From Salpingoeca rosetta (lineage: Eukaryota; Protista; Choanoflagellata): a stretch of DNA of 64,000 nucleotides. The stretch's first letter is position 1, and each line of letters opens with the position of its first letter. Under the pieces are notes generated by a model. It was given only the letters and a program-made list of their open reading frames with translations. It was not told the origin of the DNA and ran no database searches. Of this stretch, positions 40,040 to 42,300 are shown piece by piece. The position numbers and the translations under genes were made by a program. Location: the NCBI GenBank assembly GCA_033442325.1, contig JAWQFM010000010.1, positions 1,664,293-1,728,292 on the forward strand, read 5' to 3'.

Positions 40040-42300
40040 TCAAATGTCATTCTTATCGGCGCCTTCCCCTTGTGTCTCCTGCGTCACAACACATGGTCAT
40101 CCCACTAACCCTCACTCATCTTTTGCTTCAATGTGTGTGTGTGTGTGTATGTGTGCTGTTTGCGTACCTCATAGTCAAGCAGAGCAGCATCCAGCGCTGC
40201 AGGTGTTGGTAGTACAGGGAGTTGCTGCAGCAGGTCGTCGATGTCATCCAGCAATTCAGTTTTGAACGCTGGCGATCTTGCTGTTGCCAGGGCCGTAGTA
40301 TCTGGCTGCGTGCCGATGCATTCGTCCAGCAACATCGACAGGAGGGATTCCTTGTAACCGTCGTGGTCGTCACAACAACTGGTAGCATACTCGAGTGAAG
40401 ATCGTGTGCTGCTTGGACTGACCGGCACGAGAAATTGTGGCAAGATAGCGTCCAAGCACACAGTCGTAGCTGTTGTTGTTGATGATGATGATGATGATGA
40501 TGATGATGATGATGATGATGATGATGATGATGATGATGATGATGATGATGATGATGATGATGGTGGTGGTGGTGGTGGTGGTGGTGGTGGTGGTAGCGGT
40601 GGTGGCGATGATGATGATGTACGTGAGCGCGTGGACGTCGGTGTCGACACGGCTAAGCTTTGCTTTGCCTTAACGTGACGAGATGGCGTGTACGCACTGC
40701 TGTCTTCGCTGTGTGGCCGCTTTGCTTCATGTTTGGTTCGCTTCTGATGCAGGACCAGAGGCATCACAAGCTCGGCTGCTGCAGGGGAGCACATGCACAT
40801 GACAGCGATTGCCGTCGTGTCGTGAGTGCGATGGCGTATGGCATGGTGATGCATCGACAGCACGCAACAAGCCAACGTGATCGGCGCAACAGCCATTTAG
40901 CTTGCAGTGGACAGCAGCAGGTCAGAGCTGGTGGCAATGAAACTCACATGCAACGCGAAGCGCAGAACATAGCTCCTGAAACATCCCCGGCTGATACACG
41001 TCGTGTTCGATCTAACATATCCCGGTGCCATGACATCATGCACAGCACAAATCATGAGGTCTGCGGAGGAATCAATCACACAACCAACTATGCCGTGGTG
41101 TGCACCGTGGTGTGCTGGTGTGCATGGCTTGCATGTCGGCGAACTGCCTCCCCCCTCCCCCAAACACACACGCACGCGCGCACAATACATTCAATTTCAC
41201 ATGAAAAGGTAGAAAACAAACGCGCAAACCATACCACACATCGCTTGCATTCGCGCGTTCTTTCACCTTGAAACCAGCGAGGCGACTCTCTTGGACGAGG
41301 AGTTGAAAGAAGCGTTGCTCCTGGGTCGTCGGAACAAAGTAGTGATATGGGTTGATGCAAATGGATGCGAGGGCCCCATCCAAGCACGTCATTTTTGCTT
41401 GGCCATTGCCCCTGTGCATGAGTTGAATGATGTGAACCGTGTTGATTGTTCAGTTGAGTTGTGATGATGCAACCCTAAGCCTTGTCCACAAACAAACACG
41501 CCTGCACACAGACACACACAGATACACACACACATACATAGCAGAGCACAACAACGACTAATGAGCTGGAAACTGCATGCGTGTGCATCGTGCCAAGCAC
41601 CTGATGCCTGCGTCGCAGCTTCCGAGCTTTCGCCAGGACCGGCGGAGCAGTTCATCTGTGATGGGGTACGATGTGCCGAGAAGGGTGCGGAAGAAGGCGT
41701 GCGTCGATACGCGGCGGGTGTTGCCCCCGACTGTTTGGTGAACGAACAGGGGAGGTTCAAAGGTGAAAGTGCACGTGAGCTGATTTGGTGTCGACGGAAT
41801 CGGCCAATACAACTGCAGTGGGATTCAAGCAAGAGAAACATAGAAGCACAACATGTGTGCGTGCGCGTGTGTTTGTGTGCGACTGGGAGGGGAGGGGAGG
41901 GGAGGAGAGAGAGAGAGAGAGAGAGAGAGAGAGAGAGAGAGAGAGAGAGAGAGAGAGAGGTGTGTGTGTGTGTGTGTGTGTGTGTGTGTGTGTGTGTGTG
42001 TGTGTGTTGCGGCGTCGGGCATGCACAAGCGTGATATGGCAGTGTAATGACACCGGTACACGTTCCCGCGAACGCCATATTGAGGGTGCTGTGCGCGCGT
42101 GTTCCTAATTTCGACAAAAGGTGCAAGTACTGTCGTTCTCGTCTAGGTAGACTGCCCTCCTTCCCATACTCACTCGTGCTGGAGAAGAGGGCGGATGTGT
42201 GCGTGCAATAGTTCTTCGGGCACGTCCTACAGTGTCCGCGGCTGATGTCGGGGAAGACATGCGCGCCACTTGAGCAAACCCGCCAATTTCGGTGGAACAT
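40040..42300 (-). CDS. Candidate MH1-like (Smad/NFI-type zinc-binding) DNA-binding protein, ~420 aa, 6 exons, no MH2
   Basis: Phase-consistent exons 42300-42027, 41730-41601, 41411-41267, 41011-40948, 40778-40168 and 40078-40040 (1263 nt, all GT-AG). They yield ...LLSKLGTRAHSTLNMAFAGTCTGVITLPYHAFGGNTRRVSTHAFFRTLLG...RKLGSC...ICINPYHY. The start codon and first junction are the least certain parts. Confidence 0.65.

What the first reader, a model, noticed from the sequence alone, without database searches (positions are those of the whole stretch)
40040..42300. Hidden six-exon gene encoding a Smad-MH1-like domain without MH2: candidate pre-metazoan MH1 transcription factor
Seen: no single ORF shows this gene, but six GT-AG exons join in phase (274+130+145+64+611+39 = 1263 nt). 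The spliced core is RERQYLHLLSKLGTRAHSTLNMAFAGTCTGVITLPYHAFGGNTRRVSTHAFFRTLLG...RRSWRKLGSC...ICINPYHY (motif at 41339-41359). Known: Smad MH1 runs, in the same order, LVKKLK..L..LEKAI, CITIP, a beta-hairpin followed by PH, ELR...C and C(V/I)NPYHY. It binds zinc through three Cys and one His and is structurally related to His-Cys-box (I-PpoI-type) homing endonucleases. Downstream the protein has a basic NLS-like segment (KRTKHEAKRPH), poly-Pro/poly-Ser and an acidic-hydrophobic tail (ELLDDIDDLLQQL...LLDYE), a typical activator layout. Inference: a stand-alone MH1-type DNA-binding protein in what appears to be a unicellular relative of animals, relevant to the origin of Smad/NFI factors. Its hairpin (GGNTRRVST) differs from Smad RLQVSHRK, so DNA specificity would differ.
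Basis: partly seen in the sequence, partly recalled or inferred. Interest (0 to 1): 0.88.

Follow-up and report, generated by a model that had tools for sequence, protein, structure and literature searches.

The report
Stand-alone MH1-like gene in a choanoflagellate
This is a real, expressed, spliced gene whose N-terminal zinc domain is predicted to share the fold of the Smad/NFI DNA-binding (MH1) domain, with no MH2 domain; stand-alone MH1 in choanoflagellates is already published at domain level, so the gene sharpens the account of Smad origins rather than changing it.

Summary
The gene is real and lies on the minus strand. The two end exons are wrong. The true 5' end is two exons, 42753-42617 and 42268-42174. 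The last exon starts at 39970, not 40078.

The RNA-supported product is 399 aa. Residues 11-172 match, at 118.6 bits, a conserved domain family found only in choanoflagellate transcriptomes among named sources. The genome holds two paralogues on another contig.

Sequence similarity to MH1 is below threshold: Pfam gives 14-17 bits against a cut-off of 25, and only the C-terminal SC...C(I/V)NPYHY part aligns. AlphaFold models of two family members support the fold. In the better model, only Smad4-MH1 and NFIC out of 48,161 solved chains reach Z 2 or more, and Smad MH1 chains reach Z 6.3 over 101 residues.

No MH2 domain was found, and the catalytic residues of His-Me nucleases are not conserved. 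The most likely function is a sequence-specific zinc-dependent DNA-binding transcription factor.

Richter 2018 and Lopez-Escardo 2019 already reported separate MH1 and MH2 domains in choanoflagellates, so this is a new member of a known kind. The scan noted a similar MH1-like gene elsewhere in this genome.

The parts
42617..42870 (-). Exon A: 5' UTR (at least to 42870) and the CDS start. ATG at 42753-42751. It codes aa 1-45 plus 2 nt, including the conserved GRDRRC helix of the domain.
   Evidence: junction 42268|42617 (9 reads in X22 plus the X4 contig, which reaches 42870); in-frame stop 14 codons upstream of the ATG; the region is conserved in paralogues L002 and L003.
42174..42268 (-). Exon B (95 nt): holds the zinc-knuckle-like C-x2-C-P-K-N-x-C-T-H segment, aa 46-77.
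   Evidence: junctions 42268|42617 and 41730|42174; 69% identity to the L002 exon; the three Cys are invariant in the 15-member alignment.
41601..41730 (-). Exon C (130 nt): second strand of the predicted beta hairpin (NTRR), the following helix (VSTHAFFRTLLG), PITDELL, and the conserved SC (Cys115).
   Evidence: junctions, after a 1-nt GT-AG shift; 21 of 42 columns invariant among the three genomic copies..
41267..41411 (-). Exon D (145 nt): GNGQAK loop, the ICINPYHY motif (41339-41359), and the following helix.
   Evidence: junctions. Pfam MH1 15.1 bits, profile positions 90-100 of 103. Smad4 MH1 is the only PDB family hit..
40948..41011 (-). Exon E (64 nt): end of the conserved region (IEHDVYQPGMFQELC).
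   Evidence: junctions 41011|41267 and 40778|40948. L002 has a 64-nt exon at the same phase.
40168..40778 (-). Exon F (611 nt): basic stretch KRTKHEAKRPH, poly-Pro/poly-Ser coded by a trinucleotide microsatellite (40462-40622), and the acidic-hydrophobic tail ELLDDIDDLLQQL...LLDYE.
   Evidence: open frame; depth on both sides and junctions at both ends. No read or contig crosses 40462-40622; no Pfam family.
39700..39970 (-). Exon G: last five codons (HSTCV), a stop codon ending at 39953, and the 3' UTR running to at least 39700.
   Evidence: table 8: X4 contig record 1 joins 40168 to 39970, and depth is zero in 40021-40127..
40995..42723 (-). MH1-like zinc domain, aa 11-172 of the 399-aa product, spread over exons A-E.
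   Evidence: 118.6 bits, one domain, against family profile A6. E 1.3e-42 to Choanoeca flexa protein P0001; family models match Smad MH1 and NFI folds.

Best explanation
Window 39700-42870 (minus strand) holds a seven-exon, expressed gene for a 399-aa protein.

Its N-terminal ~160 residues form a cysteine-rich zinc-binding domain of the MH1 / His-Me-finger fold. The predicted layout is two N-terminal helices, a C-x2-C...C-x-(C/H) knuckle, a basic beta hairpin (S-T-x-N-S/T-K/R-R-R) leading into a helix, then SC...C(I/V)NP(Y/H)(H/C)Y. The rest of the protein is a basic stretch, low-complexity Pro/Ser and an acidic-hydrophobic tail.

It is one of three paralogues in this genome and belongs to a family seen across choanoflagellates, in both craspedids and acanthoecids.

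The most likely function is a sequence-specific DNA-binding transcription factor. On this reading it inserts the basic hairpin into the major groove as Smad and NFI do, with the C-terminal tail acting as the activation region. It has no MH2 domain and so is not receptor-regulated like a Smad.

Shown: the gene model, expression, family membership, conservation of the Cys/His pattern, and the predicted fold similarity of family members to MH1 and NFI. Inferred: zinc binding, DNA binding, nuclear role and activation function.
For: Gene model:
- Five junctions come from raw RNA reads plus an 895-nt spliced contig; the sixth comes from a second contig.
- Paralogue L002 has exons of 130, 145 and 64 nt at the same phases.

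Family:
- A profile of exons C and D found 56 proteins at E of 1e-3 or below among 1.84 billion representatives.
- All named sources are choanoflagellates: Choanoeca flexa, Mylnosiga fluctuans, Didymoeca costata, Savillea parva, Stephanoeca diplocostata and Acanthoeca spectabilis.
- The spliced window protein scores 118.6 bits against profile A6, which was built without it.
- In the tree the window gene and L002 are sister to the C. flexa protein, with support 99/97.

MH1 link, by sequence:
- Pfam MH1 is the only family matched by more than one member: 11 of 15 match it, best E 0.0051.
- All 11 PDB hits of the family profile are Smad MH1 chains, E 0.086-0.5.

MH1 link, by structure:
- The AF2 model of P0005:1-169 has pLDDT 90.7 and pTM 0.88, with a beta hairpin followed by a helix.
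- In the search of 48,161 representative solved chains, only Trichoplax Smad4-MH1 (Z 4.7, rmsd 3.8, 90 aa) and NFIC (Z 4.1) reach Z 2 or more.
- In the second look, Smad MH1 chains reach Z 6.3, rmsd 4.0, 101 of 120 residues and 25% identity. 23 chains have Z of 5 or more, and NFI chains have Z 4.1-4.7.

Zinc ligands:
- Five Cys are invariant, and the NPYHY His is replaced only by Cys, in 3 of 15 members.

No MH2 or other Pfam domain was found in the rest of the protein.
Against: - No sequence test reaches significance for MH1. Pfam scores are 14-17 bits against a cut-off of 25. The PDB profile E is 0.086 or higher. Foldseek E is 0.12 or higher, with TM 0.35-0.48.
- Z of about 6 is below the level the tool calls safe.
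- The structural evidence comes from models of relatives (P0001 and P0005), not of the window protein. The window protein has no reference and could not be folded.
- The family has extra conserved Cys (C-x2-C...C-x-C/H) that Smad MH1 lacks.
- The Smad base-contacting residues are not conserved.
- No read crosses the coding microsatellite at 40462-40622.
- Read support is thin: 1-9 reads per junction.
- DNA binding is untested.
Confidence: 0.7

Rival explanations
1. The domain is a separate, choanoflagellate-specific zinc module that shares only the short C(I/V)NPYHY-like motif with MH1 by convergence. The weak fold matches would then reflect a common small alpha/beta zinc arrangement, not descent.
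For: All sequence matches to MH1 are sub-threshold and confined to about 15-30 residues. Foldseek found nothing at E of 1e-3 or below. The best Z is 6.3, and TM is below 0.5. The family has an extra Cys cluster that Smad lacks.
Against: Of 48,161 chains, the only two with Z of 2 or more are the two known MH1-fold families. The alignment covers 100 or more of about 120 MH1 residues in the same order. Two different models and three search engines converge on MH1, NFI and His-Me. The Cys and His align with Smad zinc ligands.
Confidence: 0.15
2. The domain has the MH1 fold but does not bind DNA sequence-specifically. It could, for example, bind RNA or protein, or act as a chromatin adaptor, and the gene would not be a transcription factor.
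For: The Smad base-contacting residues are not conserved. Long family members (800-980 aa) carry large uncharacterised C-terminal regions. No functional data exist.
Against: The invariant basic/polar hairpin (S-T-x-N-S-K-R-R) sits where Smad and NFI contact DNA. The window protein has an acidic-hydrophobic tail and a basic stretch, which is typical of activators. All characterised MH1-fold proteins bind DNA (established knowledge of Smad and NFI).
Confidence: 0.15
3. It is an active or recently domesticated His-Me-finger (HNH / His-Cys-box) endonuclease rather than a transcription factor.
For: ESM Atlas shape search puts phage HNH_3 clusters first for model 2, with TM 0.40-0.45 normalised by target. 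The top BFVD rows are HNH endonucleases, though at E of about 1. The number of conserved Cys/His would allow two zinc sites, as in I-PpoI (my knowledge).
Against: The His at the first hairpin strand and the Asn in the following helix occur only in part of the family. Both are absent from the window protein (ALFSST..., AFFRTLLG) and from its two paralogues. The matches to nucleases are weaker than those to MH1 in solved structures. The gene is a normal multi-exon nuclear gene conserved across a whole class, not a mobile element.
Confidence: 0.04

Closest known systems
Smad MH1 domain (Pfam PF03165; e.g. Smad3 1OZJ/1MHD, Smad5 6FZS, Trichoplax Smad4 5NM9)
   Same: - The predicted fold of family members superposes over about 100 of 120 residues, with Z up to 6.3.
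- The order of elements is the same: helices, beta hairpin, helix, Cys, C(V/I)NPYHY.
- Cys, Cys and His align with Smad zinc ligands C109, C121 and H126.
   Different: - There is no MH2 domain and no linker with PY/SP sites.
- The Pfam score is below the cut-off.
- An extra conserved C-x2-C...C-x-(C/H) cluster lies before the hairpin.
- The hairpin sequence is S-T-x-N-S-K-R-R rather than R-L-Q-V-S-H-R-K.
- Among named sources it is found only in choanoflagellates.
Nuclear factor I (NFI/CTF) DNA-binding domain (NFIX 7QQD, NFIC 9XVD, NFIA 9JH4)
   Same: It is the second family that reaches Z of 2 or more in the PDB-wide search. Z is 4.1-4.7 with 103-114 residues aligned. It too is an MH1-fold domain used without MH2.
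   Different: No NfI_DNAbd_pre-N or CTF_NFI regions were found by Pfam. The structural score is lower than for Smads. NFI is animal-specific.
Stand-alone MH1 domains of choanoflagellates reported by Richter et al. 2018 (PMC6040629) and Lopez-Escardo et al. 2019 (PMC6792448)
   Same: Same clade and same claim: MH1 and MH2 occur on separate proteins in choanoflagellates, and the Smad architecture arose by domain shuffling on the animal stem.
   Different: Those papers give only Pfam-27 domain presence. The text and the supplementary files held here give no gene, structure or family description. I could not establish whether their hits are this family. With the current Pfam model this family stays below the cut-off.
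His-Me finger endonucleases (phage HNH_3 PF13392, zf-His_Me_endon; I-PpoI His-Cys box)
   Same: Weak shape similarity, with TM 0.40-0.45 normalised by target. Both are Cys/His-rich, and the C-x-N-P-x-H-hydrophobic signature resembles the nuclease motif (my knowledge; Grishin 2001 proposed that MH1 derives from this fold).
   Different: The catalytic His and the metal-binding Asn are not conserved in the family and are absent from the window protein. It is not a mobile element.

Membership tests
MH1 domain (Pfam PF03165) | Profile match at or above Pfam's gathering score (25 bits) | tested here: not met
   Exon D alone scores 15.1 bits, E 0.028. The contiguous relative P0001:1-170 scores 14.6 bits. 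11 of 15 family members match below threshold, best E 0.0051. The six-frame genome search found nothing. The spliced window protein itself could not be submitted because it has no reference.
MH1 domain (Pfam PF03165) | C-terminal signature C(V/I)NPYHY | tested here: met
   ICINPYHY lies at 41339-41359 on the minus strand. It aligns to VCVNPYHY of Smad3/4/5 in HMMER alignments. It is conserved as C-x-N-P-x-(H/C)-Y in 15 of 15 members.
MH1 domain (Pfam PF03165) | Zinc site of three Cys and one His (Smad3 C64, C109, C121, H126) | tested here: inconclusive
   Invariant Cys in SC and in C-x-NP, and an H/C in NPYHY, align with C109, C121 and H126. Metal content is untested.
MH1 domain (Pfam PF03165) | MH1 fold: N-terminal helices, DNA-binding beta hairpin followed by a helix, small sheets around the zinc site | tested here: met
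   This was tested on models of relatives, not of the window protein. In model 2 (pLDDT 90.7), only Smad4-MH1 and NFIC of 48,161 chains reach Z 2 or more. Smad MH1 chains reach Z up to 6.3 with 101 aa aligned and rmsd 4.0. The scores are moderate.
Smad proteins | MH2 domain (PF03166) C-terminal to MH1 | tested here: not met
   Pfam found no MH2 in exon F or in ten full-length relatives. None of the 21 proteins carries a precomputed Pfam domain.
NFI/CTF | NfI_DNAbd_pre-N (PF10524) and CTF_NFI (PF00859) regions flanking the MH1-like core | tested here: not met
   Not reported by Pfam for the window pieces or the relatives. The only link is structural similarity, Z 4.1-4.7.
His-Me finger (HNH_3 / His-Cys box) endonucleases | Catalytic His at the end of the first hairpin strand and a metal-binding Asn/His in the following helix | tested here: not met
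   The His occurs only in the DHFQST subgroup. The window has ALFSST, L002 has SLYTST and P0001 has SFFNST. The helix Asn (WKNKLG) is replaced in the window (FRTLLG).
Choanoflagellate MH1-like family defined here (alignment A6/A7) | Single contiguous match to the family profile, including RD-x-RC, C-x2-C...C, S-T-x-N-S-K-R-R, W-x3-SC-x2-G, GNGQ-x-K and C-x-NP-x-(H/C)-Y | tested here: met
   118.6 bits over aa 11-172, against a profile built without window rows. Paralogue L002 scores 106.8 bits. E 1.3e-42 to the C. flexa protein.

The most novel reading that the evidence does not exclude
This choanoflagellate family may be the surviving sister, or an ancestral-like form, of the DNA-binding domain that was later fused to MH2 to make Smads and was reused in NFI. 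On this reading it still carries a second Cys/His cluster like His-Cys-box nucleases. It would then be an evolutionary intermediate between His-Me-finger endonucleases and animal MH1 transcription factors, sitting in an organism that I take, unverified, to be the genetically tractable Salpingoeca rosetta.
Probability: 0.3. Interest if true: 0.75.

Novelty: new member of a known kind. Interest (0 to 1): 0.5.

Why it matters
Smads and NFI are animal-specific regulators, and the origin of their shared DNA-binding domain is poorly documented. Published work says only that a Pfam MH1 hit exists in choanoflagellates.

This report adds four things:
- A concrete, RNA-supported gene model and two paralogues.
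- An alignment and a defined family spanning both choanoflagellate orders.
- Its conserved Cys/His pattern.
- Structure-level evidence that the fold is of the MH1/NFI type, although current Pfam misses it.

None of the proteins returned by the searches of the large protein collections is 80% or more identical to the three genomic copies. They may therefore be unannotated. The family gives a direct handle (DNA-binding assays, zinc stoichiometry, knock-outs) for asking what an MH1 domain did before it was coupled to TGF-beta signalling.

Tried and rejected
1. Fetching the window's own spliced protein from the 5.8-billion-protein index. I queried two parts of exon F and got no hit, so the spliced protein had no reference. 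Pfam, PDB, AlphaFold and Atlas could therefore not be run on it. I did not type it in. I scored it locally against a family HMM instead.
2. Exon-by-exon searches. Pfam and PDB gave only the NPYHY motif for exon D, nothing for exon C, and chance zinc-finger-like hits (FYVE, ZNF276, NKG2-D) for exon B. I rejected these as noise.
3. PF03165 against the whole genome in six frames: no match. This is uninformative because the domain is split over four exons.
4. Pfam on paralogue ORFs, including one with exons C and D in one frame: no MH1 hit.
5. Using PDB chain ids as protein ids: not accepted. No Smad or NFI sequences could be obtained, so no hhalign profile-profile test was possible.
6. The last index search, run at E up to 10 in the hope of also fetching Smads, returned only family members.
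7. The language-model Atlas search gave no usable hit.
8. Supplementary files of the two papers do not list MH1 genes.
10. Animal contamination was rejected.
11. My splice model for paralogue L003 failed in the script. L003 was left out of the tree.
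Full report
**1. What is in the sequence**

The region lies in a 55.7% GC window. 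The genome has 55.4 Mb in 68 contigs, and the window is contig C10:1664293-1728292. The gene is on the minus strand, and no single ORF shows it.

It has the ATG at 42300 and exons of 274, 130, 145, 64, 611 and 39 nt. All are GT-AG, the frame is open, and the product is 420 aa.

**2. What the RNA says**

Three stranded RNA-seq runs of the same organism and one assembled run were laid on 39700-42900. All pairs have the first mate on the + strand, which fits a minus-strand RNA in the usual stranded libraries.

The junctions seen are:

| Junction (+ coordinates) | Support |
|---|---|
| 40778\|40948 | raw reads and the spliced contig |
| 41011\|41267 | raw reads and the spliced contig |
| 41410\|41600 (GT-AG after a 1-nt shift: 41411\|41601) | raw reads and the spliced contig |
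| 41730\|42174 | raw reads and the spliced contig |
| 42268\|42617 | raw reads and the spliced contig |
| 39970\|40168 | a second contig |

The first five each have 1-9 raw reads. All five are also carried by one 895-nt spliced contig that runs from 42870 to 40623.

- The true exon B is only 42268-42174.
- Everything from 42173 to 41731 is intron.
- Depth there is 0-1.2, against 7 on exon B.

The real start is ATG 42753 in exon A, with an in-frame stop 14 codons upstream. The real last exon starts at 39970, and the stop codon ends at 39953. The CDS is 137+95+130+145+64+611+18 = 1200 nt, which gives 399 aa.

One caveat: no read or contig crosses the coding trinucleotide repeat at 40462-40622.

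**3. Independent support for the corrected model**

The genome has two paralogues on contig C29, about 13 kb apart. Paralogue L002 has all five domain exons. Exons C, D and E have the same lengths (130, 145, 64 nt) and phases as in the window.

**4. The family**

The spliced protein has no reference, so I built a profile from referenced pieces instead. One L002 ORF happens to read through the C-D intron in frame. I aligned it with the exon C and D pieces of the window and of L003 to make alignment A5.

The exhaustive HMMER search of 1.84 billion representatives gave 56 proteins at E of 1e-3 or below. About 45 of these are true family members. The rest match only the intron-derived columns of the profile.

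All named sources are choanoflagellate transcriptomes:

| Group | Species |
|---|---|
| Craspedida | Choanoeca flexa, Mylnosiga fluctuans |
| Acanthoecida | Didymoeca costata, Savillea parva, Stephanoeca diplocostata, Acanthoeca spectabilis |

The remaining members come from Logan, ENA, JGI and MMETSP assemblies.

A 15-member alignment of the domain (A6) shows these conserved features:
- R-D-x-R-C (the Asp and Cys nearly invariant).
- Three invariant Cys in C-x2-C...C.
- F-x-S-T-x-N-S-K-R-R.
- W-K...L-G.
- W-x2-L-x-S-C-x2-G.
- N-G-x2-K.
- C-x-N-P-x-x-Y.

The His of NPYHY is replaced only by Cys, in three members. That substitution is what would be expected of a metal ligand.

A profile built from A6, which contains no window sequence, scores the RNA-supported window protein at 118.6 bits in one domain, aa 11-172. 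The closest relative is the 462-aa C. flexa protein (E 1.3e-42). In the tree, the window gene and L002 are sister to it with support 99/97. L003 was left out of the tree, and the root is arbitrary.

No protein fetched from the collections is 80% or more identical to the three genomic copies. Two index searches with exon F found nothing. The gene therefore seems to be missing from public protein sets, although I cannot prove that this organism's proteome is in them.

**5. Is it MH1? Sequence evidence**

The answer from sequence is only suggestive:
- Pfam MH1 gives 15.1 bits on exon D.
- It gives 14.6 bits on the contiguous C. flexa domain, covering profile positions 77-100 of 103. This part holds the SC Cys and the C-x-NPYHY motif.
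- 11 of 15 members hit MH1 below the 25-bit cut-off, best E 0.0051. No other family recurs.
- The family profile against all PDB sequences returns 11 hits. All are Smad MH1 chains, E 0.086-0.5, aligned at the CVNPYHY motif.

**6. Is it MH1? Structure evidence**

I made two AlphaFold models of relatives.

Model 1 is C. flexa 1-170 with 15 sequences, pLDDT 80.1. It is mostly helical and gave weak results, but MH1 and NFI still ranked first:
- Against the representative solved chains: Smad4-MH1 Z 3.0 and NFIC Z 2.8.
- Against the ESM Atlas: the top three rows are all PF03165 clusters, TM 0.40-0.44.

Model 2 is D. costata 1-169 with 46 rows, including the window and paralogue exon pieces. It has pLDDT 90.7 and pTM 0.88. 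It shows two N-terminal helices, a beta hairpin (HFQST / SKRR) running into a helix, and short strands around the C-x-NPYHY segment. This is the order of elements in Smad MH1.

| Search with model 2 | Result |
|---|---|
| 48,161 representative solved chains | Only two reach Z of 2 or more: Trichoplax Smad4-MH1 (Z 4.7, rmsd 3.8, 90 aa) and NFIC (Z 4.1, 114 aa) |
| Second look at Foldseek's list | Smad MH1 up to Z 6.3 (rmsd 4.0, 101 of 120 residues, 25% identity); 23 chains at Z of 5 or more; NFIA/NFIC/NFIX at Z 4.1-4.7 |
| Foldseek against PDB | Stays at E 0.12, but its top 19 rows are all Smad MH1 |
| ESM Atlas | Phage HNH_3 / His-Me clusters and Smad/MH1 clusters on top |
| Viral library | Only weak HNH endonuclease rows |

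The absolute scores are moderate, but the specificity is striking. I read this as a diverged member of the MH1 / His-Me-finger fold, with a probability of about 0.8. The models are of relatives, not of the window protein.

**7. What it is not**

- It is not a Smad. No MH2 was found in the window protein or in ten full-length relatives, and none of the 21 proteins has a precomputed Pfam domain.
- It is not NFI. No pre-N or CTF regions were found.
- It is very probably not a nuclease. The hairpin His and the helix Asn occur only in part of the family and are missing in the window protein and its paralogues.

**8. Mechanism proposed**

The proposed mechanism is inferred. The Cys/His residues hold one or possibly two zinc ions that stabilise the domain. 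The invariant polar/basic hairpin and the start of the following helix contact DNA as in Smad and NFI. The basic stretch KRTKHEAKRPH could serve as a nuclear signal, and the acidic-hydrophobic tail (ELLDDIDDLLQQL...LLDYE) as an activation region.

The DNA specificity should differ from that of Smads, because the base-contacting residues differ.

**9. Literature**

Richter et al. 2018 state that the MH1 and MH2 Pfam domains occur in choanoflagellates on separate proteins and nowhere outside Choanozoa (PMC6040629; Pfam 27, default thresholds). Lopez-Escardo et al. 2019 repeat this (PMC6792448). Earlier papers had reported no Smads in Salpingoeca rosetta, Monosiga or Capsaspora, and only an MH2 with zinc fingers in Monosiga (PMC3169577, PMC2657120).

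The idea of a pre-metazoan stand-alone MH1 is therefore published. The gene model, the family definition and the structural evidence here are additions. I could not tell whether the published hits are this family.

**10. Organism**

The tools code the organism's name. That name is my inference and is not verified.

An earlier scan note (s1-435984) reports an MH1-like / His-Me zinc domain on another piece of this genome. It probably refers to one of the C29 paralogues I found independently.

**11. Verdict**

- It is a new member of a known kind, with interest 0.5.

Noticed in passing
L002 = G000:C29:735613-738753 and L003 = G000:C29:722720-725815: Two paralogues of the window gene lie about 13 kb apart on another contig. 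L002 keeps the same intron positions and phases (exons of 130, 145 and 64 nt). L003 has exons A and B fused into one exon and reads VCVHPYHY.
   Followed up: partly
window 40462-40622; also 40123-40161, 41504-41542, 41900-42010, 42450-42490: A trinucleotide microsatellite codes the poly-Ser/poly-Pro tract inside exon F. Dinucleotide (GT)n/(GA)n repeats lie in several introns of this gene, and (GT)n repeats in several introns of paralogue L002. These repeats break the RNA contigs and were skipped by the read layer, so continuity across 40462-40622 rests on the genome alone.
   Followed up: no
proteins P0005 (aa 737-799) and P0010 (aa 666-741): The long (about 800 aa) acanthoecid family members have a weak Pfam FGF match near the C-terminus (E of about 0.003, below the cut-off), which may indicate a beta-trefoil-like fold. 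The window protein lacks this region.
   Followed up: no
alignment A6, column of the His in NPYHY (P0029, P0012, P0007): Three family members have NPYCY instead of NPYHY. This is a His-to-Cys swap at the position that aligns with the Smad zinc ligand H126, and it fits a metal-binding role.
   Followed up: partly
window 41947-42160: Low-level RNA coverage (depth 0.4-1.2) and a 170-nt contig lie inside the 41731-42173 intron. This is most simply unspliced precursor or intron retention.
   Followed up: partly
proteins P0013, P0063, P0064 (ENA/Logan): A subgroup carries an extension of about 170-190 aa, rich in Met, Pro, Gly and His, in front of the domain. In Mylnosiga proteins P0014 and P0024 the domain is interrupted by an insertion of about 170 aa after the first helices.
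   Followed up: no
This would fit the published statement that MH1 and MH2 sit on separate proteins in choanoflagellates. I did not check it.
   Followed up: no
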